Shown: positions 19,601 through 62,150 of the stretch, piece by piece | Position numbering within the stretch: position 1 is the first letter of the stretch | Layout of the letters: each line of letters starts with the position of its first letter | IMG/VR virus record: IMGVR_UViG_3300050343_000191 | Coordinates: 124,001-188,000 of that record | Reading direction: 5' to 3' (one strand) | DNA length: 64,000 bases | The notes under the pieces: model-generated | The model's database searches: none | Told to the model about the DNA's origin: nothing | The model's input: only the letters and a program-made list of their open reading frames with translations | Program-made: the position numbers and the translations under genes

Positions 19601-22600
19601 TGATTGATATGTCTTAGCAATACCTGCGTTGGTTGTAAGTCCAACACCCGATGCATCAATTAATTGAAAAGTCAACGTTGCTGGACTGGTATTTGCAAAC
19701 TGTATTACTTTGAATAATTGATAGTCATAGTCACTAGAATTGAATCCAGATCCATCTGGAGAGGACATTTCAATGCCTTCAACAAATACTTTATCATCAA
19801 CAGAAAATGGTGCTTGATTATATCCAAGAATTGGTGTCTTAAGCACACAAGTTGCAATTCCAGTTGGTCCACTAACCATTGAAACGATACCCACACCATT
19901 TGAATTATTGATTGTAATAATCTTATGTGGTTCAGAATCTAATCCAAATATTGGTGCTAATTGAACAATTTCGGAAATAGATCCATTCGGCGCTTTTGCA
20001 ACAAGAGTTGTTGTATCAACAATACTCTTAGTCGTATCATTCCAGAGAATAACATCTGGATCAGCAAGATATTTTGCACCGGCAAACTGAATATCAATTT
20101 CTTGAATCGTATCTAAATTGTCAACAGTGACAATTGGTGGTACAAATGCTTCTGGTCTAAGAGTCTTATCTGAAGGATAGTCATATCCAATATCACGAAG
20201 TCTAGTCTTTTTGATTCTACCAATAGAAGTAGATATTCCAATAATATTAGCATTTCTACCATTTACAGATGTAACATCTTCAAATGATGGGAGTTTATCA
20301 AAATTAAATCCTTCTGAAATAACTCTTACTTTAGAAATACTTCCATTAAGTGCGTTTGAGGATTTAGTGCTATATTCTAAAGTATCACATTCAGCACTGA
20401 TGTACGATAATATATTTGGATATCTGAATGGAGAAATCTTGAACTCAGTTGTTGAAGATGTTGTTGAAATTCCAAATACAGAGTACGTTCCGTTATATTC
20501 ACTATTTTCATATCTAATTTCTGAATATGCTTTGACTTCAGTATCCGCAGTGCTGATGTATCCACCTTTTTCTAAACCATAGTAAAGTCTTGATGGAATA
20601 TTATTAGAGTAATTCAGAGTCAATGAAGAATCAGAGTCAGTGCCAAAACCAACACTACCAAGACCAACTACGTTGAAGTCTCTAGAATCTCCTGAACTGA
20701 TATATTCATTATTGAAATTCTTGTCTCTGTAAATCTTTAATTGATATCCTCTTAGTGAAGTATCCTGAAGATTAAACTTCAAGTCACTATTTCTTATAAC
20801 ATCAATTGGTGGATTGACAGCAGAAATATAATGATTAACTCCACCAGTTGCACTAATACTTACTCCATTCTCTGTTTTTGGATTAGATTCATATAAAGTC
20901 TCTGCAAGTCTGAATTTATCAATACTATCTTGAATTATATAATAAATGCCAGTTGTTATACCAGAAGCAACTTCTGCTGCTTCATAAAATACTTTATCAC
21001 CAGTTTTATATCCATGATCTTGATAGGTAAACGATCCGTCAGAGAGAGTAATACCCGTCGAATTGATACCAATTGTATTGACAAGAATTTTCTTCTCATC
21101 TAAATTCAATTTTATATTCAATGCTCCAGTTGTTCCAAAACCAACAACAGTATTTGGAACTACATTTAGTTTGATAACGTCTTTATTGAGTAGACCATGA
21201 GTTGACGAAGTACTAACAATGGTTGTAATTCTGTCAACATTTCCAAGAATTTGTCCTTTATTAGTTTCTAAAAGATATTCTGAATTATTAGATCCATCAC
21301 TATAGAAGAACAATCCTTCAGATGCAGTGGTTAAACCAACTTGTGTTGTTAATCCAATGAGATTTTCGCCTTTGTTTATAACAAATACATCACTTGATAA
21401 TGTATTTGTATCTGGAATAAAGAATGTTCCTTGGTTAAGGGAGTTATCCCCCACAATAAGAGAATCAACGCCAGCAAGAGTACTCTTAGTAAAAGTAATT
21501 CTTTCTCCTGTCCTTAATCCATGATTGGGTATATAAATTGCTCTACAGGGAACAGAAACGCTAGATGTAGTGACTCCAACTGTTCTTACTTTCTTTTGAG
21601 CTCCACCTGCAGTAGTTCCAACACCAACGGATGTTACTGCATTAAAATAAATTAGTTTATTTCTTTCAGAATTAAACTTTGTGGTTTTTACTGGAAGTTT
21701 GACTCTATCAGAACTCAAACTAAGATCACTTCCAAAGGAGTGTGCTACACCAGTAGATCCAAATCTCTTAACAGTAAGTACGCCGTTTGAATAGTCATTG
21801 AGAACTCTTACAGTCTCAGTACCATCAGAGGATGTAATTGTTATAGAATTGCCAATTGATACTTCTCTAAATCTTCTAGAAACAAAAATATCCTCAAATT
21901 TACCGCCAGGAAGACCTGAGTAATTGGACATTGTTCCAGCAAGACCAACGGACTCTGTAGTAAATCCTATTCTCTTAGGTCCACTAAGGAATGGTATAGA
22001 GGTCGAAAGACCACTCACAAGAACGGTATCGTTATTATTTAAATCATATCCATCGCGATTGTAAGCAGAAACTTGATTATCATTGTCCCAAACAAATACA
22101 CAGTTTACATTTCTTTCCAATTCAGTTCTAATAGAAGATATACCAGCACCCTTTAATTCTTGAACTTCTCCCCTAAGACCAGCACCGCCTGTACCTTCAA
22201 AATTAAAGTTAACTCTATCGCCAATAGAGTAACCAACTCCACCATCAATGACTCTAATTTCATCAACAGATCCCTTTGTAACTGACTCTACATTACAGCG
22301 TTGTTGGAAAGTTTCATAAGATTCGTTGATAAAGTCATAATCTGCATATGGATCACTGACTTTATATGGAAAGGTATTTCTAACAAGATTATTTCCATTG
22401 AAATCAAATGTCTGATCTAAAATTAGATTTTCACCTATTACTTGTGACTTAAATTCATTTCCAACAAAATATGGGTATGCTGGTGCAAATTTCGCAGAGT
22501 TTTGCCCACTGGTTGTAACTCCAACAAAGTATGCATAAACTCCATTTGGAAACTCTGGAGTTTTACAGAATCTACCATTATGCAAATCAAGATCACCACT

Positions 22601-25600
22601 ATTATTGTATAAGTAATCTTCTTTGAAGAATCCTGGTTCAAAAGTAGGTGGTCTATCAACAATAGAATTAGTGCTTAATTCATATCCAGTTTCAAGTCTA
22701 GCAACACCTGACTGAACATTATCTGCCGTTTGATATCCAAAGGGACCATAAATTGGATTTCCGTCATATGCCCATCCAATAATGGGTGAGTGAGATCCAT
22801 TTAAAGATTCAAAGTTCGATGCAAGATCTTGGGAGTATCCATATATTCCATAAACCAAAGAATCCTGCTTCTCATCCTTGTAAAGACTAGAATAAATTTC
22901 TGGACTTCTTGTTGCGGAAATTTTTCCAAATCTAAACGCATCGTTTATTGTTAAATCTCTAATTCTAGTATCAAAAATTGCACCAGATCCTCTAGAATCT
23001 ACAAATATTGAAGTAGAAGATGTGCTATACCCAATACCCGGATTAATGACAATAACATCATCAATCTTTCCATTTAAAAGTACGGGTCTGAGAATTGCAC
23101 CTACTCCACCAGAAGGATCTTCAATTTTAAGTTCTGGGATTGACTTATATTCAGATCCTTTGTTTAATACTTGAACATCAACAATTCTTCCATTAGAAAT
23201 AATTGGTGCAAGTTGAGAATTTTTACCTTTACTTATTGAAATTCTTGGTTTTGTATGTAAATTGAATACAGTAGATCCATATCCAGTTCCAGATTCATAC
23301 AAATAGGCATCAGTAATCTCACCAGTTACGATTGGTGTAAAGGTAAAGGTTCCAATACCAGATGCTCCAAAAGAAACATTAGCATTAACTTTAATCTCTG
23401 GATATTGGAAAATATGGTAACCACTTCCAATAGAATCAAATTTATTAAACTTTGATTTTTTGAGATCATCGGTAAATGTTCCAGCAATACCAACATTTAC
23501 AAGTCTAAATTGATCTGAATCTACAAATTGAATAGAATAACTATTTGAAGTAGAAAGACCAACAATGGGATTGCCTGTTGATTTATATGTAACTATTTCT
23601 CCATCCTTAAATCCATGATTATTAAAGTATACTGAATTATACTCTGTAGAAATACCACTAGATTTTACGCTTAATTTTCTGTAAGCATAACCAGATCCAC
23701 TATTGAGAACAGTAATAGATCTTACATTTTTTTGCGATAGAGTTCTAAATTTATGAATACCAGATGCTGATGTAGCAGCTGAAAGACCAATAGTATTGAT
23801 ACCAGTACTTATAGTGGTAATACCTGATGCAGAAGGTGCAAATGCATCATTATCATTTTTAAATAATCTAATAGTGGAAGTATTTACAATTCTAATTACA
23901 TATTCATCACCACTACTCAAACCTCCTGTTGAGATATTATTTGGATCGTATGCTTGTCCAATCTCAATAGGATTATTACCATTTTGATTGTAGATAATAT
24001 GCTCACCATCTGCAAGATTATGTGCCTTTGTAAATGTAATGGTTTCATTACTAGGATCAATTCCGCCACCAACATCTAGTCTACGACTGTCAAAAGATAT
24101 CTCTCTAAATCTTGTTCCAATAACTGGTTCCAAGGAACAACCAGATCCATTACCACCTATCAAATCTAGAGATAGGAATTCATCAAATCCAAATTCTTGA
24201 GGGTCAACAATAACTTGTTTAACATTACCAATAACAACTGGTTCAACCTTTGCACCAGTTCCAAGAGGAAGACCAGATCCAACCTCTGCAACATCTTCAA
24301 TATTTAATTCTGGTGGATTTATAACATCATATCCTTTACCACCATTAAGAACTTCAAATTCCTCTACAGGTCCATAATAAATTTTATCCCTGGAATCAGG
24401 ACTTACAATCTCTACACCATCAATCAATACTCCAACATTACTTACAGTCCTATCAACACTTTTACTACCTTGTAGTTGCTGTGATAATGGGAACTTTCTA
24501 AGAATTTTTTTACTTGAAAGAGTTCTATTTTCATGTCTCTTTAAAGTAAAATTATGTGCTCCAGCACCAAAGTTTGGATTAAATCTAGCAATATCATCAA
24601 AGTTTGCAATAGTTTTGGCGTTATTGGCAAGTTGAGACTTTGAAGCGTATAGTTTAATTTCGTTTGCAGCAACGAGTTTTACAAAATAACTTTCTCCAGA
24701 TGAAAGTCCAATTAAAGGACTTTCTGCGGTGTAGACTATTTCATCACCATCTCTAAAATCGACTGGTGTTGAAAATACAATTGTTCCATAAGTCTTATAA
24801 TAAGAATTGTAACCACCCAATCCTTGAGTATTGTTTGAGCCTACTGTTTTAATATATCCATCTGGAAGTATAGACTCAATAATATCATCTTTAATAGTAT
24901 ATCCTGGAAGAGAATTTGATGCCAAATACCCAAAGATTGCGAAATCGTCTACGTAAATATTGGATGTATTTGCAAGATATACTTCATTACCTACAGTAAG
25001 AACTACTCCAGAACTCTTTGCCTTTACAATCTTTCGTCTAATACTGTAATCTTTATTAGGATCTGGTGTAAAAGTACCAATATTGGATAGAGTAACTTCT
25101 TTGGTTAATGTGTTTATTGAAGACACTGTTGCAAATGATGCATTAGCAACATTTGGATCAGGTACAACTACTTGTTGACTATCGCCAATGAGAACCTCAA
25201 CAGAATCTCCTAGTTTAAGAAATGCCTTATCAATATCAGAAAATAGTGTGAATACAGAAGAATTTACTTCCTCCACTTTAAATCTTGGACTGGTATTATA
25301 AATCCAAGAATTAGCAAACATTTGCTTATAAGTCCTATCAACGACAGGATTCTCAATAACCTCACCAACATTTCTTGTAGTTATTTCCTCATCTTCTTCC
25401 ATCAGAGGAATATCTACCAAAGGTTTTAATTCTGATAGAACTCCAGTGATTCTCATATCACATCTATTTTCAATATCACCATCCTCATAACCAAAAATGG
25501 TTTCATCTGCTCTTACAACATCAGAGATATTAATTTTTGACGTGACACCAGTACAACCATAAAACTGATTAATACTCTTTGAAGTATAATCAATTCTATT

Positions 25601-26644
25601 ATTTCCAGAAATAATGGTCCCTGTTTGACCAAATCCAATTGTAGAGTCAACACTAATAACTGACGCATTTACTTCAACTGGTTCTAATGATCTAGATGCT
25701 CCAGGAATAGTAAAAATACCCTCTACAAGGTCTCTATCATTATATCCAACAAATACCCCAAGTTTATAAAAAGTTTGAGTGTCTCTTGTAAAAATCTCAA
25801 CATCAGAAACTGATGCATTTGTATCAAGATCATTTGACTTAAATACTGTCTGACCTTCTAATCCAAAAGGATTACCCGAAATATTTTCCGCTACGATAAC
25901 TTCTCTTCTGATATATTCGGCAGAAGATGGTTTAATTAGTCTACCTTCAAGATCTAATACTTCAGCATGAACACCATAAAGAACTTTGAAAAGAATTCTA
26001 ATAGATTCTGCAATACCCTTTGATTGATAAAAGTTTCTTGCATGCTTGATAAAGTTTCCAACATCTAAATCAGAAACAAAATCATACTCTTCCAGACCCG
26101 GAGTAAAGGTTTTTTTTAATTTTTTATAAAATTCTTGTAAGAAAACAACACTTAAGTTCTTTACTACTGATCCATTGGCCGCGGCGGATGCAGAAGTTTC
26201 ACTAAAAACAATATTCTGACTGTTTACATTGCTGAGAATATTAGAAATTCCTATATCATATCCAGAGATTCCACTGAATCCGCGAACACAACTATTGAAA
26301 GAAGTAGTAGTCTTTGATTTATAGGTGATAATTTCATCACCAATTTGTAAAAGACCATACTCGTCAGGAAATCCTTTTGTGGAAGTTACCTGAATAGTAT
26401 CTTGAGAAGATGTAATATCTCCTGTAAGCGATGTCTCACCTACAACAACCTCTGGAACGAGATTATCTACTCTGATATATCGATCAAGATTATCGACAAG
26501 ATCTACACTACCGCCCTGATGTTCTAAAGACAAATAGTATTGTCTAAAAAATTCTATGGCGTTTGGAAAATCAGCAACTAAAAACTCTGGAAGTTGGCTC
26601 TCAATAATTTTATTGAGTTGCACTCTCTTCTCAAATTGCGACAT
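13697..26644 (-). CDS. gp7: Baseplate wedge initiator gp7-like giant protein (4315 aa)
   Basis: N-terminus IIESQLPEFL...FFRQYY; FYQSKGIAESIRILFKVLYG; YYQNLSYSIKS...VHPAGLKNF; sits between gp6 and gp8. Confidence 0.85.
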   Translation of the reverse strand: MSQFEKRVQLNKIIESQLPEFLVADFPNAIEFFRQYYLSLEHQGGSVDLVDNLDRYIRVDNLVPEVVVGETSLTGDITSSQDTIQVTSTKGFPDEYGLLQIGDEIITYKSKTTTSFNSCVRGFSGISGYDIGISNILSNVNSQNIVFSETSASAAANGSVVKNLSVVFLQEFYKKLKKTFTPGLEEYDFVSDLDVGNFIKHARNFYQSKGIAESIRILFKVLYGVHAEVLDLEGRLIKPSSAEYIRREVIVAENISGNPFGLEGQTVFKSNDLDTNASVSDVEIFTRDTQTFYKLGVFVGYNDRDLVEGIFTIPGASRSLEPVEVNASVISVDSTIGFGQTGTIISGNNRIDYTSKSINQFYGCTGVTSKINISDVVRADETIFGYEDGDIENRCDMRITGVLSELKPLVDIPLMEEDEEITTRNVGEVIENPVVDRTYKQMFANSWIYNTSPRFKVEEVNSSVFTLFSDIDKAFLKLGDSVEVLIGDSQQVVVPDPNVANASFATVSSINTLTKEVTLSNIGTFTPDPNKDYSIRRKIVKAKSSGVVLTVGNEVYLANTSNIYVDDFAIFGYLASNSLPGYTIKDDIIESILPDGYIKTVGSNNTQGLGGYNSYYKTYGTIVFSTPVDFRDGDEIVYTAESPLIGLSSGESYFVKLVAANEIKLYASKSQLANNAKTIANFDDIARFNPNFGAGAHNFTLKRHENRTLSSKKILRKFPLSQQLQGSKSVDRTVSNVGVLIDGVEIVSPDSRDKIYYGPVEEFEVLNGGKGYDVINPPELNIEDVAEVGSGLPLGTGAKVEPVVIGNVKQVIVDPQEFGFDEFLSLDLIGGNGSGCSLEPVIGTRFREISFDSRRLDVGGGIDPSNETITFTKAHNLADGEHIIYNQNGNNPIEIGQAYDPNNISTGGLSSGDEYVIRIVNTSTIRLFKNDNDAFAPSASGITTISTGINTIGLSAATSASGIHKFRTLSQKNVRSITVLNSGSGYAYRKLSVKSSGISTEYNSVYFNNHGFKDGEIVTYKSTGNPIVGLSTSNSYSIQFVDSDQFRLVNVGIAGTFTDDLKKSKFNKFDSIGSGYHIFQYPEIKVNANVSFGASGIGTFTFTPIVTGEITDAYLYESGTGYGSTVFNLHTKPRISISKGKNSQLAPIISNGRIVDVQVLNKGSEYKSIPELKIEDPSGGVGAILRPVLLNGKIDDVIVINPGIGYSTSSTSIFVDSRGSGAIFDTRIRDLTINDAFRFGKISATRSPEIYSSLYKDEKQDSLVYGIYGYSQDLASNFESLNGSHSPIIGWAYDGNPIYGPFGYQTADNVQSGVARLETGYELSTNSIVDRPPTFEPGFFKEDYLYNNSGDLDLHNGRFCKTPEFPNGVYAYFVGVTTSGQNSAKFAPAYPYFVGNEFKSQVIGENLILDQTFDFNGNNLVRNTFPYKVSDPYADYDFINESYETFQQRCNVESVTKGSVDEIRVIDGGVGYSIGDRVNFNFEGTGGAGLRGEVQELKGAGISSIRTELERNVNCVFVWDNDNQVSAYNRDGYDLNNNDTVLVSGLSTSIPFLSGPKRIGFTTESVGLAGTMSNYSGLPGGKFEDIFVSRRFREVSIGNSITITSSDGTETVRVLNDYSNGVLTVKRFGSTGVAHSFGSDLSLSSDRVKLPVKTTKFNSERNKLIYFNAVTSVGVGTTAGGAQKKVRTVGVTTSSVSVPCRAIYIPNHGLRTGERITFTKSTLAGVDSLIVGDNSLNQGTFFIPDTNTLSSDVFVINKGENLIGLTTQVGLTTASEGLFFYSDGSNNSEYLLETNKGQILGNVDRITTIVSTSSTHGLLNKDVIKLNVVPNTVVGFGTTGALNIKLNLDEKKILVNTIGINSTGITLSDGSFTYQDHGYKTGDKVFYEAAEVASGITTGIYYIIQDSIDKFRLAETLYESNPKTENGVSISATGGVNHYISAVNPPIDVIRNSDLKFNLQDTSLRGYQLKIYRDKNFNNEYISSGDSRDFNVVGLGSVGFGTDSDSSLTLNYSNNIPSRLYYGLEKGGYISTADTEVKAYSEIRYENSEYNGTYSVFGISTTSSTTEFKISPFRYPNILSYISAECDTLEYSTKSSNALNGSISKVRVISEGFNFDKLPSFEDVTSVNGRNANIIGISTSIGRIKKTRLRDIGYDYPSDKTLRPEAFVPPIVTVDNLDTIQEIDIQFAGAKYLADPDVILWNDTTKSIVDTTTLVAKAPNGSISEIVQLAPIFGLDSEPHKIITINNSNGVGIVSMVSGPTGIATCVLKTPILGYNQAPFSVDDKVFVEGIEMSSPDGSGFNSSDYDYQLFKVIQFANTSPATLTFQLIDASGVGLTTNAGIAKTYQSGYATLINENIYPRIDIKQKRGTFTKNERLFVNSDGNGFRSEDAFISLVRDDYIKYTGKYNLNKGDIIKGIISGVIAEVTNIDRKRAKFVVDYSSRMELGWSDDVGKISEDYQVTPNNDYYQNLSYSIKSPITWDELSTPVNSIVHPAGLKNFADVGVTSVGRSGIGLGGTTTAIVILDVVSERRVDIINNFDNAVDVDPRVSPVTGLTQSNALQIQNRKLTDYIECRTNRVLIHDDISNKFSSRGFKDTFVEIEEIDFVDNHVRYVIQIADPDSKDVQLSELVVQSTTNDIFIFEKYNSFTNIKLGDFSANIDSFGRKTLVFTPTDAFETDHDIKVLKKSYLFQALPPGNSGIGTQAIGSVNLVSSFVGLSSVSGGNNIGTLAEFNGTDFNGLFANIEISNRFSGETNYVEAAIDFDGTNTYVSEYYFDHTTQSYSASNVGLVSAIYDANSGIVSVRGRNFDQVDAFDYRTHIVGFGNTTTGIGTYRFLLNNQPAGTERSARLESTIGFGTDIVRVGTFDSRFISAAAAVVRVSAGTTSAIHQVNILSNSRTSEVTVTPGPFAPVNNVTGLGTFGGEISGNQFYLNFYPDLGYNVEAQAFSEVFYREMDFDNQANSLSYGPTDQLVFLSAFDGLNGLRANRTNFTLTHEGKPIYVKTFDPTDTVNINYSTGVFTLRDHFFNTGEELIYRPTSTFIGIGTQPMGIGATVNHLGIVTDKLPDRVYPIALTPDTFKLSTTPQFATAGISVTFTDAGIGNAHELEFTKKLSKTVIAIDGIVQQPITFTPINHKLDFNSGGISVGISTFNVTGISSVQPRDLLRVDDEYMKVVEVGLSTNIGGQILGPINGLIAAGVAATFPTVAVQRGAVGSAATSHIDGSTIQIYRGALNIVGNEVHFIDPPKGNNRARRNESNLPYVTAQFSGRTFLRSDYDTNMVFDDISDSFTGIGKTYTLKVGGANTTGIDAGNGILFINGVFQTPTTENNAGNNYEIDNDSAVGVTSVIYTGITSVDGSFIQSDFDINQNQLPRGGLIVSLGSTPGLGYAPLLGAEIKVLKNSTGQLTDLIGINTVGSTVAISTALYNNITGILEIETNDSHNILGGDFVKLDNLEFSCGSTGYGTTTIFPDYDYPVDVVQVISATRVSIRVGPSTIPHTYETGGTVRRYFTNNFGSGYREPVSIGITDLAYEHKFIRSVNNSVTASSGGPFTPTKADYTSHTGVLRLTIPSHGLDTTDTVQIATDGLIFTCSDDDFFTEQPYPRATDPAAGATLGITSFTTNTISVGVGSAGGSGTGAVVDATVGIGGTLAFSITNPGQGYINPALIIPEPNYENVEVVGVSRLGIGATTETGRNLLLNLTVGAAGTSNVGIGSTLFLIDTFKVARSGYAFKPGDILEAVGLVTAKNYTQPIAPFQLEVVETFTDRFSSWSFGEMDYIDSIFGYQNGTRKRFPLYYNGELLSFELDPNNPLSANIDLDSVLVIFINGVLQTPGYAYQFTGGTSFLFMEAPKVNDKVDIFFYIGQDGVDVLQVETTETLKIGDDVRMLRQPLISTSQRQINDRAITEIVGSDIVETNIYSGPGVDDTNFRPFDWIKQKKDIYVKGDIVSKVRPVLETKIFPTAKIIGDVTPTSSDIFVDNAQFFDYDEIILDLNQNTFTFDAFMMETSNEPVSAAFTSTVSIAGTVSAVTIDNVGFGYTTSTIDIKFSAPKEIGVGIGITATGTANISNGQVSSVTVINPGFGYTNTNPPRIIAELPTPLYETINTVQNVQGFSGIITGISTTTGTGGHPLALKFNFRAMKDYGENGEANVASDALDLVAGYPIMIYDTTVGNGVTSVNSSDSAVVGIGTSFLDNVYVVNSITSLASNAEIICNIDSGSPVIGILESGTFDDLQAGLTTSLGKLSWGRIYNYDNRTNGISIGVTGLTVDAGLSTFPTIQRRGNFGEGKTGAIRSRKPRADGVSLEADNNLSFYIQ

Positions 26645-26647
26645 ATT

Positions 26648-28552
26648 TTATTTCCTCTCTAGATCTCCGTTGGAATAACTTGAAGTATAATAGTCTCTTG
26701 TGAAAGACACGCCAGAAATATCTTCACCAGATGCAATAACATCTTTAACCATATTTATTGTACTACTTGAAACGCTAAAACTGAGGTAAAGATCTTTTAA
26801 ACCAACCACATCATTGGATTCTGGGAAAGCTTGAATCTCAACAATATTATTTGGTTTTTCAGTTTCAACAATATTGATAGTATTAAGAATAACCTCCCCC
26901 TTTATGTAATCAACTACACCTGCTTCTTTGGCAACAACAGTTTTTATTCCATTAGCGCCAATCTTAACTATGGAAACAACTCCACTCTTAAGGTCTGCAT
27001 TTGGTAAATCTGTGATATACACCGTTGAAGTATCACCAACAATTTTAAATCCTGTAGATTTAATATTCAGTCCATTTGGTTTTACATTAAATCTATTACC
27101 AAAGCAAATTTCGTATTGAGCAAACTGATTAACCAATACTTTCATATCTCTTCTAATTTTCACCTTAGTGATGTTAGAAGTAATGGCAGTATCAACGCGA
27201 TCAATTAGTTGAAGAACCTTACTATACTTAAATCTTCCACCAAAACGATTCATATCAACATCTTTAGAGTATTTTGTAAGACTATCAATAATATTAGTCC
27301 TTAAACCATCAACAGTAGCAACCTGTGAGGAGTTATAATAGATATTAGATTCAATTTCAACATAAAGAACCTTAAGATCAATAATTTTTTGATTAATACC
27401 TGCAATTGAGTACTGCTTAATCTTATTCAGAATATTTCTCTTATCAAAATCAGAGACATATGTGCCATTCTTGGGTTTTATGCTGATTTGAACGGTACCA
27501 AACTGTGGTGGTACTAATTCTTCACCACCAACAACTGCAACAGACTCTGTATTTGGGTAAATCGAAGCAATAATTGCCTCATAATCTCTTGATGTAACCG
27601 CTCTATATTGCGCTGAGTACAGTCTTGGGGCGAAATACTTAATAGAAGACACATCTTCAATTCCGCCACCGTTCATCGCCTTCTGGATGGTTGTAACGGG
27701 TACTGATCCACTAGGAATTACCCTCTTACCTTCCTGATCTTGGAGATTTGCTTGAAATTCAAAGACGGAAGGTCCATTTCCTGCTTCACCATCAGTAACA
27801 ATGTAACTTACAGAGATAAGTTTGCCATTTTCCAACTTTTTACCAAAATATCCATCACCAAACAGTAATTCATACCTCTCATCTTGAACTTCCTGGAGCA
27901 AATAGATCTCTGAGTTCTTATCAATGTTTAAAATATTGTCAACTCTACTAAAATCTCTACCAGTGCCTGCTTCACCAACATTAGAAACGTTTACTCTAAT
28001 GGTTGAAGCATCAATATTTGGATTATCAAGGATAAAACGCTGATCTATAGATGTATCAGTGACAAATTGACGTGTAAGAAGAGTTCCTTGAAAAAGTTCT
28101 ATTGGTTTTTGTTCTGTTCCGAACTGTGCTACACCATTAACCACTGCTGCAGTGACTTTTTCGGGTAGTGAAAAGCGATATGAACTATTATCTTGCCCTC
28201 CAACACACACCAGACCTGCTTCAACGGTGATAAAACCGCTACTGGTAGTGGTAGGGACTGAAAAGGTTACGTTTGCCTTAGCGGCGCTTGCAGAGCGAGG
28301 CACGTAACCAATGTTTCGTGCTAGTGATACGACATTTTCGCGTACTGTTGCACCATCTAGGAATGATTCATTGACTACAAGGTTAGCATTGAACGCATTA
28401 ATGTACGTATTATATGCTAAGGTGTCAATTAATATCGAAAAATTAGATCCCTCAAAGTCAAAATCCGTAAAATTTGAATTAGAACGGAGATATGCTTTGA
28501 TTTCTGATTTAATTTGATCGAAATCTAAGTTAGTAAACTGAGTAAAAGGCAT
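26648..28552 (-). CDS. gp6: Baseplate wedge subunit gp6
   Basis: LDFDQIKSEIKAYL...FTDFDFEGSNFSILIDTLAYNTY; RAVTSRDYEAII. Confidence 0.95.
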   Translation of the reverse strand: MPFTQFTNLDFDQIKSEIKAYLRSNSNFTDFDFEGSNFSILIDTLAYNTYINAFNANLVVNESFLDGATVRENVVSLARNIGYVPRSASAAKANVTFSVPTTTSSGFITVEAGLVCVGGQDNSSYRFSLPEKVTAAVVNGVAQFGTEQKPIELFQGTLLTRQFVTDTSIDQRFILDNPNIDASTIRVNVSNVGEAGTGRDFSRVDNILNIDKNSEIYLLQEVQDERYELLFGDGYFGKKLENGKLISVSYIVTDGEAGNGPSVFEFQANLQDQEGKRVIPSGSVPVTTIQKAMNGGGIEDVSSIKYFAPRLYSAQYRAVTSRDYEAIIASIYPNTESVAVVGGEELVPPQFGTVQISIKPKNGTYVSDFDKRNILNKIKQYSIAGINQKIIDLKVLYVEIESNIYYNSSQVATVDGLRTNIIDSLTKYSKDVDMNRFGGRFKYSKVLQLIDRVDTAITSNITKVKIRRDMKVLVNQFAQYEICFGNRFNVKPNGLNIKSTGFKIVGDTSTVYITDLPNADLKSGVVSIVKIGANGIKTVVAKEAGVVDYIKGEVILNTINIVETEKPNNIVEIQAFPESNDVVGLKDLYLSFSVSSSTINMVKDVIASGEDISGVSFTRDYYTSSYSNGDLERK

Positions 28553-37131: not shown

Positions 37132-38034
37132 TTACTCAACTGGCACAGAGAACCTACCATATTTGAAGTTATATCGGGAGAATAACTCTCTTTTCACCAG
37201 TTTATATGAACCAAAGTCATTTGTTAGTACATAACCCTCAGCATCAATGAATCGTTTGCCTAAGTATGCAGCAGGACCACCAGATGTGGCACAAATTGAT
37301 AATTTATCCTCCTTAATCGTCTTTACAAGTTTCCATAAACGCATTAAGTTCAAATCACACTCGGCAACGTCCGCCAATGCCTCTGGATCAAGCACAGCAC
37401 CAGTTTTAATGAAAGTATTCAAAACCTTCTCAATCTTTCGTGCGTGTGTCTTAGTTTTGGCGTATTCTACCGTAGTTGACATTTGACGTGCAAATCGCAC
37501 AATATCATCAAATTTATCATCTTCTTGCCATCCTTCAGGTTGAACAAACAACACATCTTTAGTGCTCTTAGGTGTAAGAATCATACAAGATCCTATAGCA
37601 TCACGAAGATCACTCTCAGCAACATAGATTGTATGTGGAGCAACAATGATACTCTGAATTACAAGATCAGGGAAAACATAAGTGATTGCATTAGGTGTGT
37701 AAGTGTCATCACCACCAAAACCAATAAAGTCACCCTGAAAGATACAATCAGTTCGTGGCAGACAATCAAAACAAGCGTGGAGAATGTCTGCTACTTCACC
37801 CTCATAATGTAGATCAATCTCATCGTGAGAGTGTGCAATTCGCAGTTTCTTTTTGTTGAATACTGCTTTAGTACCTACGAAAAATGTTTTTGTAGCAGGA
37901 TCAGTACCCCATACAATTGCAGGAGCACCATCAATCTTCACAGAAACATTTGCAGGTTGAGTGAACCAATCAAGTACACTCAGATCACCCATTAGAATAG
38001 AATCTTCAGGATGTTGCAGATGAGTATTTTTCAT
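37132..38034 (-). CDS. DUF6267-like protein with a KxDG nucleotidyltransferase-like motif
   Basis: MKNTHLQHPEDS; VSVKIDGAPAIVWG; IFQGDFIG; AEGYVL; YKLVKRE.FS..NF. Confidence 0.6.
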   Translation of the reverse strand: MKNTHLQHPEDSILMGDLSVLDWFTQPANVSVKIDGAPAIVWGTDPATKTFFVGTKAVFNKKKLRIAHSHDEIDLHYEGEVADILHACFDCLPRTDCIFQGDFIGFGGDDTYTPNAITYVFPDLVIQSIIVAPHTIYVAESDLRDAIGSCMILTPKSTKDVLFVQPEGWQEDDKFDDIVRFARQMSTTVEYAKTKTHARKIEKVLNTFIKTGAVLDPEALADVAECDLNLMRLWKLVKTIKEDKLSICATSGGPAAYLGKRFIDAEGYVLTNDFGSYKLVKRELFSRYNFKYGRFSVPVE

Positions 38035-38715
38035 TTCGGTTGCACAAAATCAGCAGTTTGATAAAGTCCGTCAGCAATAAATTGACGAGCAGATGTGTTA
38101 GTCCAGAGAAGAATACCGACACCAACGATAATTAAGGTTTTCACTTACCAACTCCATAATCAGGGGCAGTTGCTTCCAATTCACTGATGCTATATTGACC
38201 ACTTTTAGTAGAAAAGTTGCTCATATCATTCCAAGTGTCTTCACCATAAAAATCCATAATCTCACTCTTTACATCATTTTCAGTCCAATTTTTCATATTC
38301 TCCTCCACCATCTCTATAGCAAATTGCTCAAGAGATGTCATATCCATACCATCAACAATGAGAGAGGCATAGTTTGCTTTGAGTTCGTCAAGTTGCTTTG
38401 AGTTCATAACTGAAAATGAAGTGAAATGAAATGATGAATGGAATTAGTAGTCGTAATCCGAGTTTAGATACTCTTCAAGATCAAACTTTTTCTCATTGTA
38501 AAGATCTTGCATTTCAGGAATGTCAAAGATCTCACCAGGAGTGTCTTGGATTTCAGTCAGAAGGTCGTTCATTAGTTTTCTTGAATTTGAAGAGGAATAA
38601 TTTCATAATCTACAATGTCCTCACCAGGGTTGAGAACCTCACCAATTGCTTCAGCAATCCATTTTCGTGGATGCGTTTCGCTTTTGACTGTTAGTGTGAT
38701 CTGGTAGGTTTCCAT
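38031..38715 (-). other. Run of small early CDSs
   Basis: 38031-38144 (37 aa, one hydrophobic helix), 38141-38407, 38444-38572 (42 aa) and 38572-38715 (47 aa); overlapping stop/start codons. Confidence 0.65.
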
Positions 38716-38738: not shown

Positions 38739-39302
38739 TCATACAGGCAATACTGCCTCACTCCGTGTCTTCTGTGCCAGTTTGCTCTTTGGCACATTCA
38801 ACTCCTCCATTATAATTTGTTTTGGTAGAAAGTCCCAGCAATAGTATGAACTACTAAACGTGATCTTATCATTCGATCTACCATCAGGACTATGAAACTT
38901 CATTCGCTTGTCAAACATCAACAATTGCAGATCCTTGTCCTTGAACAACTGCTTTGGTGCAGAATCATTCAACCAAGTGTTAGTCATAATCAACGCAAAT
39001 GGTTTGTTGAATGACAATGCCCGCTCAAAGAACTTACGCTTGTTTGTAAATGGAGGATTTGATACAATTACATCAAAGTGAACAGGTTCATAGGCAAAGA
39101 AGTCTTTACCCTCATCAATATGAGAGTATTCAACACTATGAGTCTGTGAAATTTGCTTAACAAATTCACTCTCTGCCTTATCAAATGGACACCATACTTT
39201 TGCATCCGTTGGAATATACTTCAGGATGGGAGTAACAGCGTAATCTGGCGTATAGCACTCATCATTGTTACCTGATGAGTACATAAGTTCTTTAGAGTCC
39301 AT
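38739..39302 (-). CDS. Amino (N6-adenine type) DNA methyltransferase
   Basis: DECYTP (motif X), VWCPFD (I), DFF and VSNPPF (IV); likely start MDSKELMYS. Confidence 0.8.
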   Translation of the reverse strand: MDSKELMYSSGNNDECYTPDYAVTPILKYIPTDAKVWCPFDKAESEFVKQISQTHSVEYSHIDEGKDFFAYEPVHFDVIVSNPPFTNKRKFFERALSFNKPFALIMTNTWLNDSAPKQLFKDKDLQLLMFDKRMKFHSPDGRSNDKITFSSSYYCWDFLPKQIIMEELNVPKSKLAQKTRSEAVLPV

Positions 39303-39304
39303 AA

Positions 39305-39805
39305 TTATCCTAGAATACAAGTACCAACGGCATAAATCTCCTTCTTAGATATTGTAACACCAATACGGGGATCTTTGGCATTACCTGATTTCTTTTTAGG
39401 ATATTGTTTCTTTGCTTTTGGAATCAAAATACACAATACATCATCACAATTAAGTTTCCATACTTCTGCAATCTTAGCACCTTCATATCGTGCATAATAG
39501 TGATTCTTATACTTACCAATCTTATCTTCTACTAAGTATCGTTCTTGCTCTTCCCAAGTGTCTTGAACACTGATACCATTATACGTTGCATTGATAGAAT
39601 TTGCAATAGTTGATTTATACTCAGCGCCACCATCTTGATCGAAAGCATCAGCACCACTGTAATCATCAGCGATACGATGCCCTAGAATCCCTGCCATATA
39701 AATTTCACGCGAACGTGCATAACTGAAAGGATCTCCCCACCCTTGTTTTTCACAAAGGCAGTACATATCCTCGTAAAGTGAGCGATACTGTTCTTCAGGT
39801 GTCAT
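39305..39805 (-). CDS. PvuII-like PD-(D/E)XK restriction endonuclease (putative)
   Basis: GADAFDQDGGAEYKS parallels PvuII GNDAVDNAGQEYELKS; IGKYK..YYARYEG..IAEVWKL parallels [25 protein letters not shown]; similar length; adjacent to the MTase. Confidence 0.65.
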   Translation of the reverse strand: MTPEEQYRSLYEDMYCLCEKQGWGDPFSYARSREIYMAGILGHRIADDYSGADAFDQDGGAEYKSTIANSINATYNGISVQDTWEEQERYLVEDKIGKYKNHYYARYEGAKIAEVWKLNCDDVLCILIPKAKKQYPKKKSGNAKDPRIGVTISKKEIYAVGTCILG

Positions 39806-39972
39806 CAGAAAACCTCCGTCCAGGCAAGATGTTGTGCTGTGGTGATTCTACCATCGTCCAGTAGACCATCACAGACTCGGCAAAAAACTTCAAACTTCTC
39901 CATACGGTTTAGTTTGTTGTCAACCCCCATTGCGGTTTCACCCACAACTTTTAGAACTTGCTTTTTGAGCAT
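39805..39972 (-). CDS. 55-aa hypothetical protein, first gene of the R-M unit
   Basis: Hand translation MLKKQVLKVVGETAMGVDNKLNRMEKFEVFCRVCDGLLDDGRITTAQHLAWTEVF; its stop overlaps the endonuclease ATG; dyad at 40032 with TATGAT at 39996-40001. Confidence 0.7.
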   Translation of the reverse strand: MLKKQVLKVVGETAMGVDNKLNRMEKFEVFCRVCDGLLDDGRITTAQHLAWTEVF

Positions 39973-39996
39973 TGGTCTCTTGCGATTACTCCGTAA

Positions 39997-40494
39997 TCAT
40001 ACAGCAGCACAGAGGCGATTGGAGAACCTCTGCGCCACTTTCCCAACTGGCACACCAAAAGTATCACTCATATACCAATCATATAACCTTAATTCTTCTT
40101 CTCTTGCCTCAATTTCGTGTGGTTGATCTTCATAAGACCAATTTTCCACTGGTTCTGTAGAATAACACAATTTTCCCCTCCGAAAATGCAAAGAACCCTC
40201 TACCCATTGCTTCAGATGCGTCAATTCGTGTAAAAGTGTCTTAATATAAACTTCCTTACTCATATCAGTCTGAAGTTCGATCATAAAATGACGAGGGCGA
40301 TAGTTATGACCCACAACATCACAATAACCAACAACTTGTTCACTTTTCAATCCACGATGAATAATATCAACGGAGATTTTGTGGCGTGGGAAAAAGTTAT
40401 TCAGAAACCAAGAGGTAACATCCTCGCAGATGATCTTAGAATAACCGTATCCAGAATGGTAGATGCTAGACATGTGCTCCAGTGTAGAAACCAA
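39997..40494 (-). CDS. HExxH zinc metallopeptidase (SprT/zincin-like)
   Basis: TLLHELTHLKQW plus QPHEIEA (third ligand E). Confidence 0.7.
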   Translation of the reverse strand: MVSTLEHMSSIYHSGYGYSKIICEDVTSWFLNNFFPRHKISVDIIHRGLKSEQVVGYCDVVGHNYRPRHFMIELQTDMSKEVYIKTLLHELTHLKQWVEGSLHFRRGKLCYSTEPVENWSYEDQPHEIEAREEELRLYDWYMSDTFGVPVGKVAQRFSNRLCAAV

Positions 40495-40531: not shown

Positions 40532-41421
40532 TCATACTACTAATTCAGGTGCATATTGTTCAACTTCCTCAACTAATTCTTCATCATCAAGATCACCCAG
40601 TTCCCTATTCTGTGTGTCAATGAAGAATCTCTTCAAGTCTTCAACGGTCATCTGATTAAGATCCCATTGAATGTATCGTTCTTGGAGTTGATCGCGGTTC
40701 ATAATGTTTCTATGCTGGTGTTACGTTCCATTCATCTGTCGGAACCATTGTGTTGATAACGTGCTCAACATTTTCAATTCCATAAACTACAACTTGTTGA
40801 GTTGAAGAGTAACCATTTTTCTTCTCACGTTTCCATGAGACAACCCATCGATCACAAGATACATTCATACCCAATTCCCCATAAACTCTTCAAGAGTGTA
40901 TCCCTCTCCAGTTGATGTTTCTTCAATCAATTGCTCGATTGTAAGTTCTTCCATCTCTTTACGATATTCTTCTGGTGTTGGATCTTGTGGATCATAATCA
41001 TCATGGCAGAGATAGTCCCACTCTGCCACAAGTGCATCAATCAGTTGCTCTTTAGTGTAATCCATAATCAGCGAACATAAAGATAAGAACCTGCCCAATC
41101 TGCGCGATTGAAGCACTCTTGACGCGATGCAATCTCAAGCAAACGATAGCGCACAATCTTAGCAGGTGCCTTGTAAGATGCTGGTTTGTAAACTTCACCG
41201 GTCTTCTTATCAATGAAAGCGTGGCAGGAACCTTCATGCCAAATTTTATGGTACTTACGACCAGAAGAATCCAATTCAAACTTCATTGATCGTGAAGGGT
41301 AACGCTTCTGAAAATCTTCTATCAGTTTGTCGCACAATGTGAGACAATGCTCAGTGATCTTCAGTTGAATATCGTTGCGTGCCTGTTGTGTGGCAGCGAA
41401 GTCAGCGAAGGTGGTTTCCAT
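40532..41421 (-). other. Run of small early CDSs
   Basis: 40532-40702 (56 aa), a 52-aa ORF near 40710-40868, 40865-41116 and 41068-41421; dyad at 41479. Confidence 0.65.
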
Positions 41422-42062: not shown

Positions 42063-42296
42063 TCAATCGTCATAAACCAAGCATTCGGGTTCTGATGGGT
42101 TAGCATCACAATATAGTTCAAGTGCAGTGGGATCGTGATGATCACCTGCTTCAATATCTGCCTTATGATGTTCGGCATAATCTTCTAATTCTTGCAGTTC
42201 TCCTTCAATATGACGACGTTGGTTAGGAGAAATCATTGGATTGTCAAGGATTTCTTTATCCTTTTCTATATGTTGTTCGATGCTATCCATTAGCAT
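42063..42296 (-). CDS. cp12: CP12 Calvin-cycle inhibitor (cyanophage type)
   Basis: C-terminal DPTALELYCDANPSEPECLVYDD with the C-terminal Cys pair; no N-terminal Cys pair; AATAAATA at 42316-42323 upstream. Confidence 0.85.
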   Translation of the reverse strand: MLMDSIEQHIEKDKEILDNPMISPNQRRHIEGELQELEDYAEHHKADIEAGDHHDPTALELYCDANPSEPECLVYDD

Positions 42297-61985: not shown

Positions 61986-62070
61986 TGCGAGTAGGGAGAC
62001 TTGAACTCCCACGAGATTAATTCTCAACAGATTTTAAGTCTGGTGCGTCTACCGATTCCGCCATACTCGC
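61986..62070 (-). tRNA. trnL: tRNA-Leu(UAA)
   Basis: GCGAGTA acceptor; GGCGGAATCGGTAGACGC D-arm; CCAGA-CTTAAAA-TCTGT anticodon arm; long variable arm; GTTCAAG T-loop; no encoded CCA. Confidence 0.95.
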
Positions 62071-62074
62071 TTAG

Positions 62075-62147: not shown

Positions 62148-62150
62148 AGA

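What the first reader, a model, noticed from the sequence alone, without database searches (positions are those of the whole stretch)
38739..39972. Phage-encoded PvuII-like endonuclease coupled to an N6-type methyltransferase
The 166-aa ORF aligns by eye along the full length of R.PvuII: N-terminal helix ...G..D.F, catalytic G.DA.D..G..E.KS, the central I.KY...A.Y.G..I..++.L, and a C-terminal basic/P-I segment. It sits 2 nt from an NPPF methyltransferase, whereas M.PvuII is an N4-cytosine enzyme, so this is a new pairing. Both lie in a three-gene unit behind a dyad early promoter. A lytic cyanophage carrying a complete R-M pair could cut host or competing phage DNA while protecting itself.
Basis: partly seen in the sequence, partly recalled or inferred. 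Interest (0 to 1): 0.75.

Follow-up and report, generated by a model that had tools for sequence, protein, structure and literature searches.

The report
Cyanophage PvuII-like nuclease with methylase partner
A T4-like marine cyanophage carries a gene for a DNA-cutting enzyme built like the restriction enzyme PvuII, directly followed by a small DNA-methylase gene. The pair is almost certainly a virus-borne restriction-modification module, which is rare in lytic phages and could let the phage cut host or rival DNA while sparing its own.

Summary

The 166-aa protein misses Pfam PF09225. A profile of its family, however, matches R.PvuII end to end (E 2e-8). Its AlphaFold model (pLDDT 97.7) has R.PvuII as its top 12 PDB matches (Z 14.9, rmsd 2.6 A). 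D53/E62/K64 align with PvuII D58/E68/K70 and are conserved. The residues aligned to PvuII's base-reading histidines differ, so the cut site is unknown.

The link to a methylase is strong:
- In 65 of 79 informative viral loci the small methylase follows within -5 to +32 nt.
- The pair stays adjacent where the nuclease has diverged to about 47% identity.
- In two loci another methylase type (NPPY 539 aa; PF01555) occupies the same slot.
- The only cultured carriers (P-SSM2, P-SSM5, P-TIM68) have both genes.

The best reading is a phage-specific Type II restriction-modification module. Cleavage, methylation specificity and biological role are untested. The "three-gene unit" and the "promoter" are only partly supported: the dyad is real and conserved, orf55 is not part of the conserved unit, and the gene chain continues downstream.

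The parts
39305..39805 (-). Gene for the 166-aa PvuII-like endonuclease (CDS 39308-39805, stop 39305-39307). The putative catalytic residues are D53, E62 and K64.
   Evidence: The ORF is listed. It belongs to phrog_35715, function unknown. The family profile matches R.PvuII at E 2e-8 over the full length. The AF2 model has pLDDT 97.7. Foldseek and VIA-align give R.PvuII as top hits, Z 14.9. D53, E62 and K64 are invariant in 31 close members and at least 90% conserved in 35 diverse members.
38739..39302 (-). Gene for the 187-aa small amino-methyltransferase with motif IV DVIVSNPPF. It consists of a catalytic domain only, with no separate target-recognition domain.
   Evidence: It hits phrog_799 DNA methyltransferase at 1.5e-38 and Pfam Eco57I at 9.6e-6. 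N82, P83 and P84 are invariant. The ESM Atlas finds small phage methylases of 164-191 aa with TM 0.73 to PF05869. A low-confidence model best matches the M.TaqI catalytic domain.
39303..39311 (-). Junction between the nuclease and methylase genes: a 2-nt spacer after the nuclease TAA, and an AGGA (39308-39311) 5 nt upstream of the methylase ATG. Translational coupling is likely.
   Evidence: Read from the sequence. The gap between the two genes in 65 related loci is -5 to +32 nt, most often 2 nt.
39805..39972 (-). orf55, a 55-aa protein of unknown function. Its stop shares one base with the nuclease ATG. It is not a conserved part of the module.
   Evidence: It hits phrog_336, function unknown, and has no Pfam, NCBIfam or PADLOC hit. 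It lies directly upstream of the nuclease in only L004-L008 and L017, and elsewhere or absent in the other loci.
39984..40001 (-). Conserved element TATGAT + dyad ATTAC-GGA-GTAAT. It overlaps the stop of the upstream HExxH gene and lies 11 nt before the orf55 ATG. It is a candidate -10 box with operator, or an RNA hairpin.
   Evidence: It has exactly one copy in the window, and the dyad has one copy in the 231-kb genome. TATRAT is present in 29 of 29 loci where the HExxH gene is adjacent (background 7.6%), and the dyad in 23 of 29. The consensus scan found no -35/-10 promoter there.
39997..40494 (-). 165-aa HExxH (metallopeptidase-like) gene. It is a frequent upstream neighbour of the pair and is given as context; its membership of the module is not shown.
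   Evidence: It has weak hits to DUF6782, SprT-like and Peptidase_M78 and hits phrog_10499 at 2e-48. It is next to the unit in 29 of 80 loci.

Best explanation
The two genes form a phage-borne Type II restriction-modification module.

The 166-aa protein is a PvuII-like, probably homodimeric, Mg2+-dependent PD-(D/E)XK endonuclease with catalytic residues D53, E62 and K64. It most likely cuts a short, probably palindromic DNA site that is not CAGCTG. The co-translated 187-aa NPPF methylase most likely puts N6-methyladenine in that site on phage DNA, so packaged and replicating phage genomes are spared. Unmethylated DNA, from the cyanobacterial host or from co-infecting phages, would be cut.

Having the nuclease gene first would be dangerous for a bacterium. 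It suits a virulent phage whose incoming DNA is already methylated. The most likely payoff is host-genome breakdown and nucleotide recycling, or exclusion of rival phages, as in chloroviruses.

Shown: fold, homology, conserved catalytic residues, conserved gene linkage and interchangeable methylase partners.

Inferred: activity, dimer state, the methylated base, matching specificity and biological role.
For: Fold and homology:
- The family profile matches R.PvuII at E 2e-8 over the full length.
- The AF2 model has pLDDT 97.7. R.PvuII gives the top 12 Foldseek hits and VIA-align Z 14.9, covering model residues 1-165 against PvuII 6-157, including the N-terminal helices.
- 19 of 31 close and 9 of 35 diverse family members touch PF09225.
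- The ESM Atlas links the family to PF09225 clusters by features (score 0.95) and by structure (TM 0.76).

Active site: D53, E62 and K64 align with PvuII D58, E68 and K70 and are conserved. They are also intact in loci that lack an adjacent methylase.

Linkage:
- 65 of 79 informative nuclease-centred viral loci have the small methylase directly downstream, and 6 more have it after a single inserted gene.
- All 4 loci of a clade whose nuclease is about 47% identical to the window's keep the same neighbour.
- In the phage collection the nuclease and the cyanophage-type methylase occur in exactly the same three phages.

Partner swapping at the same position:
- L016 has a 539-aa NPPY protein 12 nt downstream.
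- L177 has an overlapping PF01555 methylase, 4.7e-30.
- P-TIM68, L073 and L182 have a second methylase upstream.

Asymmetry typical of restriction-modification: the methylase occurs without the nuclease in 26 of 80 loci and in unrelated phages. The nuclease rarely lacks a methylase.

Expression: short contigs from four marine RNA libraries lie on both genes. This is weak evidence.

Precedent: chlorovirus-encoded restriction enzymes degrade host DNA within minutes of infection (PMC7019647).
Against: - No biochemical data exist for any family member.
- The window protein itself does not reach the Pfam PF09225 cut-off.
- In 8 of 79 loci no methylase lies in the flank. In one 48.6-kb fragment (L080) none of this type lies within about 21 kb.
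- In P-SSM2 the two genes are 6.6 kb apart.
- Five distant family members sit among unknown small genes with no recognisable methylase.
- The methylase has no separate recognition domain and an atypical motif I. Automatic names call its relatives tRNA methylases, and its model is poor (pLDDT 61).
- Palindrome statistics gave no site that marks carriers.
Confidence: 0.68

Rival explanations
1. The genes are neighbours but not partners. The small methylase is an ordinary orphan anti-restriction methylase that protects phage DNA from host enzymes. The PvuII-like nuclease has a separate job, such as recombination, repair, DNA processing or gene mobility.
For: - The same methylase family stands alone in Thermus, Fusobacterium, Flavobacterium and marine podophages, and in 26 of 80 methylase-centred cyanophage loci.
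- Phages commonly carry solitary methylases (PMC4176335).
- Some nuclease loci and distant relatives show no methylase nearby.
- Holliday-junction resolvases share the core fold at Z 6-8.
Against: - The gap of -5 to +32 nt, with overlaps, is kept while flanking genes change.
- The adjacency persists down to about 47% nuclease identity.
- Three different methylase families occupy the slot next to the nuclease.
- Co-occurrence in cultured phages is perfect.
- The full-length match is to PvuII, including its dimerisation helices, and far exceeds the match to resolvases.
Confidence: 0.16
2. The nuclease is modification-dependent (Type IV / IIM-like). It would cut methylated or hypermodified DNA of hosts or rival phages rather than unmodified DNA, and the adjacent methylase would be unrelated to self-protection.
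For: - After PvuII, the nearest solved structures are NhoI (Z 11.1) and the Eco15I N-terminal domain (Z 10.2), both solved with multiply methylated targets.
- One distant homologue lies beside a Tet/JBP, aGPT-Pplase and kinase base-hypermodification cluster.
Against: - Sequence and structure are clearly closer to PvuII: E 2e-8 and 18-23% identity, against 6-13% for NhoI and Eco15I.
- A methyl-dependent enzyme tightly coupled to a DNA methylase would endanger the phage's own genome.
- Interchangeable methylase partners fit protection, not targeting.
Confidence: 0.07
3. The protein is a catalytically dead or repurposed PvuII-fold DNA-binding protein, for example a site-specific repressor. One source labels some family members 'DNA-binding protein Fis'.
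For: - JGI names three members 'DNA-binding protein Fis'.
- One distant member (P0312) has lost the D and E residues.
Against: - D53, E62 and K64 are invariant in all 31 close members and at least 90% conserved in the diverse set.
- No Fis-like or helix-turn-helix family is detected.
- The fold search gives only nucleases.
Confidence: 0.04

Closest known systems
R.PvuII (Proteus vulgaris Type IIP restriction endonuclease, CAG^CTG; PDB 1PVI, 1PVU, 1F0O, 3PVI; Pfam PF09225)
   Same: It has the same size class (166 against 157 aa) and the same full-length fold, including the N-terminal helices (Z 14.9, rmsd 2.6 A). The same catalytic D...E.K motif falls in aligned positions. Like PvuII, it has a DNA methylase as gene neighbour.
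   Different: Identity is only about 20%, and the window protein is below the Pfam cut-off. It has one residue fewer between the catalytic D and E. The positions aligned to PvuII H83-H85 are Q81-D82-T83, and PvuII D34 aligns with Y29, so a different recognition site is expected. The partner is a 187-aa NPPF enzyme, not the PF01555 N4-cytosine M.PvuII (the M.PvuII family is from my own knowledge). No C-protein is present. The genes are co-directional with the nuclease first. The family is viral, not cellular.
Chlorovirus restriction-modification systems (e.g. PBCV-1 R.CviAII/M.CviAII)
   Same: A lytic virus of a phototroph encodes both a site-specific nuclease and the protecting methylase. In chloroviruses these enzymes are thought to start host DNA degradation within 5 min of infection (PMC7019647). 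This is the closest functional analogue for the proposed role.
   Different: The hosts are eukaryotic algae and the viruses belong to the Nucleocytoviricota. The nuclease folds and families are different, and chlorovirus enzymes are packaged in the virion. None of this has been tested here.
T4 strategy: modified own DNA (hmC) plus EndoII/EndoIV (denA/denB) that degrade unmodified host DNA
   Same: The logic is the same: mark your own DNA, cut unmarked DNA. The virus lineage is also the same (T4-like myoviruses).
   Different: T4 replaces a base during synthesis and uses unrelated nucleases. Here the mark would be post-replicative methylation by a dedicated methylase, with a restriction-enzyme fold. 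This comparison rests on my own knowledge and was not tested.
Small phage 'orphan' adenine methylases (PF05869 phage Dam; PF13651/PF07669-like 165-210-aa enzymes in Thermus phage TMA, Fusobacterium phage Fnu1, podophage Lau218)
   Same: The methylase is 27-45% identical to these. It has the same compact single-domain build and the same motif IV.
   Different: In those phages the enzyme has no nuclease neighbour. In the cyanophage clade it is locked to the PvuII-like gene.
NhoI / Eco15I N-terminal domain (BisI-type methylation-dependent endonucleases, PDB 8Q5N, 8RPX, 8Q5O)
   Same: They share a PvuII-like fold (Z 10-11).
   Different: Identity is much lower (6-13%). They act on multiply 5mC-methylated sites and have no partner methylase.

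Membership tests
Pfam PF09225 Endonuc-PvuII | Score at or above Pfam's gathering cut-off (25 bits) for the protein itself | tested here: not met
   The window protein gives no PF09225 hit at E up to 10. 19 of 31 close and 9 of 35 diverse relatives give weak hits, best E 2.8e-6.
R.PvuII-like endonucleases (homology and fold) | Significant full-length sequence homology to R.PvuII | tested here: met
   The family profile matches PDB PvuII chains at E 2e-8 to 3e-8, profile positions 9-167 against residues 13-157.
R.PvuII-like endonucleases (homology and fold) | PvuII architecture: N-terminal helical dimerisation region plus alpha/beta PD-(D/E)XK core | tested here: met
   AF2 model pLDDT 97.7. Foldseek top 12 hits are PvuII, TM up to 0.76. 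VIA-align gives Z 14.9, rmsd 2.6 A, model 1-165 against PvuII 6-157. The dimer state itself was not modelled.
R.PvuII-like endonucleases (homology and fold) | Catalytic D58 / E68 / K70 equivalents | tested here: met
   D53, E62 and K64 fall in aligned columns. They are invariant in 31 close members and at least 90% conserved in 35 diverse members.
R.PvuII isoschizomers (CAGCTG specificity) | Conservation of the PvuII base-contacting residues (D34, H84/H85, N140/N141; the list is from my own knowledge of the PvuII-DNA structures) | tested here: not met
   The HMM alignment puts Y29 opposite D34 and Q81-D82-T83 opposite H83-H85. The C-terminal KDPRIG segment differs from the PvuII segment with N140/N141. 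The actual cut site is not testable here.
Type II restriction-modification system | Nuclease and DNA methylase genes adjacent, and the linkage conserved in relatives | tested here: met
   The gap is 2 nt in the window. 65 of 79 loci have the genes adjacent and 6 more have one inserted gene. All 4 loci of a clade with about 47% nuclease identity keep the adjacency. The same three cultured phages carry both genes. Other methylase families sit in the same slot in L016 and L177.
Type II restriction-modification system | The methylase modifies the same sequence that the nuclease cuts, and the modification blocks cutting | not testable with these tools
   It needs a methylome and cleavage assays. 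Palindrome avoidance gave no usable lead.
N6-adenine (gamma-type) DNA amino-methyltransferases | Motif IV (D/N/S)PP(Y/F/W) | tested here: met
   The motif is DVIVSNPPF. N82, P83 and P84 are invariant across cyanophage and other phage homologues.
N6-adenine (gamma-type) DNA amino-methyltransferases | Canonical AdoMet-binding motif I (FxGxG) and Rossmann fold like the M.TaqI catalytic domain | tested here: inconclusive
   Motif I is atypical (VWCPFD). The model has pLDDT of only 61. Its best Foldseek hits are M.TaqI (1.3e-4, TMq 0.5), followed by RNA m6A enzymes. There is no PDB sequence hit. The Pfam Eco57I hit is just over the cut-off.
N6-adenine (gamma-type) DNA amino-methyltransferases | Separate target-recognition domain | tested here: not met
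   The protein has 187 aa and matches only positions 207-387 of the 458-position phrog_799 profile. It aligns only with the catalytic half of M.TaqI.
N6-adenine (gamma-type) DNA amino-methyltransferases | DNA (not RNA) substrate; N6-adenine rather than N4-cytosine product | not testable with these tools
   Automatic names for relatives include 'tRNA (adenine-N6)-methyltransferase'. Only the gene context argues for DNA.
C-protein-controlled R-M operons (as in PvuII) | Helix-turn-helix controller gene with C-boxes upstream of the nuclease gene | tested here: not met
   orf55 has no helix-turn-helix or other family hit and sits next to the nuclease in only 7 of 80 loci. A conserved dyad exists, but no binding protein is identified.

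The most novel reading that the evidence does not exclude
PvuII-like nucleases may be a widespread, phage-specific tool that is always paired with whatever chemistry the phage uses to mark its own DNA. The partners seen here are small NPPF methylases, PF01555, NPPY or DPPW methylases, and, in one distant relative, a Tet/JBP-kinase-aGPT base-hypermodification cluster. In abundant ocean cyanomyoviruses the pair would act as the host-genome shredder that feeds nucleotide recycling, or would exclude unmarked rival phages. That would be a post-replicative-methylation counterpart of T4's hmC plus EndoII/IV system.
Probability: 0.3. Interest if true: 0.75.

Novelty: new variant of a known kind. Interest (0 to 1): 0.58.

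Why it matters
Complete restriction-modification systems are reported as nearly absent from non-prophage phages (PMC4176335). This one sits in T4-like cyanophages.

- The window's copy is near-identical in at least 14 seawater and virome runs from several studies.
- The nuclease family has 960 sequence clusters and 423 IMG/VR loci.
- It is annotated only as 'hypothetical' in GenBank and PHROGs.

If the nuclease is active, three things follow. It gives a concrete, testable mechanism for host DNA breakdown or inter-phage competition in Prochlorococcus and Synechococcus infections. It supplies a new PvuII-fold enzyme with an unknown and probably new specificity. It also offers a minimal 187-aa methylase for study. 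The cultured phages P-SSM2, P-SSM5 and P-TIM68 make these experiments possible now.

Tried and rejected
1. Single-sequence searches of the nuclease gave nothing meaningful against Pfam, NCBIfam, PADLOC and PDB. A profile of close relatives also missed PvuII in the PDB. Only the diverse profile A2 found it.
2. I looked for a cut-site lead from palindrome avoidance. GGCC, AGCT and CCGG are strongly avoided in the 231-kb genome (O/E 0.20-0.46), but equally so in P-SSM4 and Syn9, which lack the pair. CATG is lower in carriers (0.31, 0.42, 0.66 against 0.83, 0.74), but the ranges nearly touch. I rejected this as evidence.
3. The sigma-70 -35/-10 scan found no promoter in front of the unit and no terminator bounding it.
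4. RNA-library contigs cover parts of both genes but give no 5' ends, and they cannot exclude DNA carry-over.
5. I searched five fragments that carry the nuclease alone for the methylase and found none. They are only 9-27% complete, and the P-SSM2-like ones end before the place where P-SSM2 keeps its methylase.
6. A scan of 185,579 prokaryote genomes found only two short MAG contigs, which are probably viral. The scan uses exact peptide patterns, so it sees only close relatives. The diverse alignment could not be used for it.
7. The methylase structure model is poor (pLDDT 61), because only near-identical sequences were admissible for the alignment. Its fold matches are leads only.
8. I considered orf55 as a C-protein and rejected it.
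9. Scans with two distant nuclease relatives in viral contigs found nothing.
Full report
**Anatomy**

All genes in the region lie on the minus strand. Reading 5' to 3' on that strand, the order is as follows.
- A 165-aa HExxH protein (39997-40494).
- A 24-nt spacer.
- orf55 (39805-39972).
- The 166-aa ORF (39305-39805). Its ATG shares one base with the orf55 stop (TGATG).
- A 2-nt gap.
- The 187-aa methylase (ATG 39302, stop 38739-38741). An AGGA lies 5 nt before its ATG, inside the nuclease's last codons.
- A 56-aa ORF whose ATG overlaps the methylase stop (ATGA), followed by more small ORFs.

The gene chain does not stop after three genes.

**What genome this is**

The window is bases 124001-188000 of a 231,085-bp IMG/VR virus record rated complete.
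- Its 634-aa ORF at 26651-28552 is a gp6 baseplate wedge, 65% identical to Prochlorococcus phage P-SSM2.
- A CP12 gene lies at 42066-42296.
- Three tRNA genes lie at 61986-62222.
- The finding's region occurs nearly unchanged in at least 14 seawater or virome runs from several studies.

It is a T4-like cyanomyovirus. These viruses are virulent, which I take from established knowledge.

**Is the 166-aa protein PvuII-like?**

On its own it matches nothing informative.
- It has no PF09225 hit, no NCBIfam or PADLOC hit, and no PDB hit.
- PHROGs places it in phrog_35715, function unknown.

The family is large. There are 960 clusters at E<=0.001, almost all from marine metagenomes, and 239 representatives at 50% identity.

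The evidence for a PvuII relationship comes from the family and from structure.
- Among 31 close members, 19 touch PF09225 weakly.
- A profile built from 35 diverse members (alignment A2, 23-56% identical to the window protein) hits six R.PvuII PDB sequences at E 2e-8 to 3e-8. The match spans profile positions 9-167 against PvuII residues 13-157. The tandem single-chain PvuII scores 2e-17.
- In that alignment D53, E62 and K64 fall on PvuII D58, E68 and K70. These three are invariant in the close set and at least 90% conserved in the diverse set.
- An AlphaFold2 model built on A2 has mean pLDDT 97.7 and pTM 0.90.
- Foldseek against the PDB returns R.PvuII for the first 12 hits (E as low as 8e-7, TM up to 0.76, 19-25% identity).
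- VIA-align gives Z 14.9, rmsd 2.6 A, with 146-150 of 152-157 residues aligned and model residues 1-165 on PvuII 6-157. This coverage includes the N-terminal helices that form the PvuII dimer interface; the role of those helices is from my own knowledge.
- The next structures are NhoI (Z 11.1) and the Eco15I N-terminal domain (Z 10.2). Holliday-junction resolvases and DpnI follow at Z 6-8.
- The ESM Atlas independently links the family to PF09225 clusters by features (0.95) and by structure (TM 0.76).

The fold and homology claim is therefore confirmed. The protein is not a PF09225 member by Pfam's own threshold, and it is not expected to be a PvuII isoschizomer. The residues opposite PvuII's D34 and H83-H85 are Y29 and Q81-D82-T83, and the C-terminal recognition segment differs.

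**The methylase**

- It hits phrog_799 'DNA methyltransferase' at 1.5e-38, matching only positions 207-387 of a 458-position profile.
- It hits Pfam Eco57I at 26.2 bits against a cut-off of 25.3.
- Motif IV is DVIVSNPPF, with N82, P83 and P84 invariant even in homologues from Thermus, Fusobacterium, Flavobacterium and marine podophages.
- Motif I is atypical (VWCPFD).
- No solved structure is detectable by sequence.
- The structure model is poor (pLDDT 61), because only near-identical rows were admissible. Its best matches are the catalytic domain of M.TaqI (1.3e-4), followed by other adenine-N6 DNA and RNA methylases.
- Atlas neighbours are 164-191-aa phage methylases, with TM 0.73 to PF05869 phage Dam.

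'N6-type' is the most likely reading but is not proven. There is no separate target-recognition domain.

**Are the two genes partners?**

This is the core of the interpretation, and the comparative evidence is strong.

The linkage is conserved. Of 80 IMG/VR loci found with the nuclease:
- 65 have the small methylase directly downstream, with a gap of -5 to +32 nt that is most often 2 nt.
- 6 have it after one inserted gene.
- 8 show none in the flank.
- 1 is too short to tell.

Meanwhile the flanking genes vary. orf55 is upstream in only 7 loci, and the HExxH gene is adjacent in 29.

The linkage survives divergence. In a clade whose nuclease is about 47% identical to the window's, all four viral loci still have the NPPF methylase directly downstream. 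One of them adds a DPPW-motif ORF upstream.

The partner can be swapped at the same position.
- In L016 the nuclease is 84% identical to the window's. The small methylase is replaced, 12 nt downstream, by a 539-aa protein with an NPPY motif, a Pfam Eco57I hit at 3.6e-4, and phrog_5172/9133 hits.
- In L177 the nuclease is 50% identical. Its gene overlaps a 242-aa PF01555 methylase by 20 nt (4.7e-30).
- In P-TIM68 a PF01555 methylase (3e-58) lies upstream and the small one downstream.

Co-occurrence in cultured phages is complete. The nuclease and the cyanophage-type methylase occur in exactly the same three phages: P-SSM2, P-SSM5 and P-TIM68. In P-SSM2 and P-SSM5 the genes are 6.6 kb apart, so a missing neighbour on a short contig is not absence. 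The P-SSM2-like fragments that carry the nuclease alone end before that position.

The asymmetry is the one expected for restriction-modification. The methylase occurs without the nuclease in 26 of 80 methylase-centred loci and in unrelated phages. Solitary nucleases are few, and they keep D, E and K.

**Evidence that weakens the case**

- One 48.6-kb fragment (L080) has no such methylase within about 21 kb.
- Five distant family members lie among small unknown genes with no recognisable methylase.
- One of these (P0353, L086) sits directly after a base-hypermodification cluster: GATase, acetyltransferase, ADDT/aGPT-Pplase3, Tet_JBP and Ploopntkinase3. This hints that the general rule may be 'nuclease plus any self-marking chemistry'.

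**Mechanism proposed**

Shown: a PvuII-fold protein with an intact PD-(D/E)XK site, and a tightly linked, probably translationally coupled methylase.

Inferred:
- The protein is a homodimeric Mg2+-dependent endonuclease that cuts a short, probably palindromic site different from CAGCTG.
- The methylase protects that site on phage DNA.
- Host DNA or rival phage DNA is cut.

Nuclease-first order is tolerable because incoming phage DNA is already methylated and killing the host is the goal. The nearest functional precedent is the chlorovirus restriction enzymes, which are thought to begin host DNA degradation within 5 min (PMC7019647). The T4 hmC plus EndoII/IV logic is similar; that comparison rests on my own knowledge.

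**The regulatory claim**

A consensus scan finds no -35/-10 promoter before the unit and no terminator bounding it. The dyad, however, is real.
- The sequence TATGAT followed by ATTAC-GGA-GTAAT lies at 39984-40001 on the minus strand.
- It is unique in the window, and the dyad is unique in the genome.
- In all 29 loci where the HExxH gene is adjacent, a TATRAT is present (background 7.6%). In 23 of them the dyad follows, always just before whichever gene comes next.
- Part of TATRA is the last codon plus stop of the HExxH gene, so only the dyad and its 3' flank are clearly non-coding conservation.

A -10-only promoter with an operator, or an RNA hairpin, are both possible. No transcript 5' end could be seen.

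**Expression**

Short contigs from four marine RNA libraries lie on the nuclease (for example 39561-39892 with no mismatches) and on the methylase (39049-39172). This is compatible with transcription, but DNA carry-over cannot be excluded.

**Novelty**

GenBank, PHROGs and JGI give no nuclease annotation for this family. The literature library holds no paper linking cyanophages with a PvuII-like enzyme. A 2012 survey listed PF09225 as bacterial only (PMC3424549). R-M systems are reported as 'nearly absent' from non-prophage phages (PMC4176335). REBASE could not be consulted.

I rate this a new variant of a known kind. It is an ordinary Type II logic and a known fold, in a phage-specific, divergent nuclease family with a minimal methylase partner, carried by virulent ocean cyanophages.

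**Confidence**

- PvuII fold and homology: about 0.97.
- Active nuclease: about 0.8.
- Cognate restriction-modification pair: about 0.68.
- Specific biological role (host DNA breakdown against phage exclusion): open.

Noticed in passing
window 39997-40494 (-): This 165-aa protein has an HELTH (HExxH) motif and weak DUF6782, SprT-like and Peptidase_M78 hits (phrog_10499). It lies directly upstream of the nuclease-methylase unit in 29 of 80 related loci. It may be a metallopeptidase-type early or anti-defence protein.
   Followed up: partly
window 39984-40001 (-): This is a conserved TATRAT box plus ATTAC-N3-GTAAT dyad at the stop of the HExxH gene. It is unique in the 231-kb genome and present in 23-29 of 29 related loci. 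Its function is unknown; a promoter with operator or an RNA hairpin are both possible.
   Followed up: partly
L024:1161-2171, L026, L060:4629-5642, L062 (about 337 aa); L047:2305-3219, L048 (305 aa): In six loci one gene is inserted between the nuclease and the methylase. It encodes a protein with a DGQH-type motif and a weak DUF6551 hit. By eye it recalls ParB/DndB-like DNA-binding domains, which are often fused to phage methylases. That resemblance is from memory and was not tested.
   Followed up: partly
L086:1-3881 (Logan contig SRR10190795_61686): A distant nuclease homologue (P0353, 33% identity) lies just downstream of a DNA base-hypermodification cluster: GATase_6, acetyltransferase, ADDT/aGPT-Pplase3, Tet_JBP and Ploopntkinase3.
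   Followed up: partly
L177 (JAKUSK010000074.1, 2279 bp): This contig is binned in a Nitrososphaerales MAG from station ALOHA. It carries the phage-type nuclease overlapping a PF01555 methylase, and is probably a viral contig mis-binned into an archaeal MAG.
   Followed up: no
outside the window: G000:C1:92334-92846 (-): The same genome has a second adenine methylase, a Dam-like PF02086 hit (8e-22). It matches only positions 1-171 of the 253-position profile within a 187-aa open frame, so it may be short or split.
   Followed up: no
whole genome G000; window included: The 4-bp palindromes GGCC (O/E 0.20), AGCT (0.25), CATG (0.31) and CCGG (0.46) are strongly avoided. GGCC, AGCT and CCGG are also avoided in P-SSM2, P-TIM68, P-SSM4 and Syn9. 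This suggests long-standing restriction pressure on cyanomyoviruses.
   Followed up: partly
window 37132-38034 (-): This 300-aa protein belongs to Pfam DUF6267 (2.8e-72). It contains a VKIDG motif that by eye resembles the KxDG motif of nucleotidyl-transferases and ligases.
   Followed up: no
window 38141-38407 (-) and 40532-40702 (-): Two small paralogous DUF7326 genes flank the unit on either side.
   Followed up: no
window 42063-42296 (-); 13697-26644 (-); 61986-62222 (-): The window also holds a CP12 auxiliary metabolic gene, a 4315-aa giant ORF next to 2469-aa and 1923-aa ORFs (probably structural), and a cluster of tRNA-Leu(taa), tRNA-Met(cat) and tRNA-Ile(tat).
   Followed up: no
L182:1898-2458: A 187-aa ORF with a DPPW motif (MT-A70-like by eye) lies directly upstream of the nuclease, and the NPPF methylase lies downstream. 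The nuclease is thus flanked by two methylases, as in P-TIM68.
   Followed up: no
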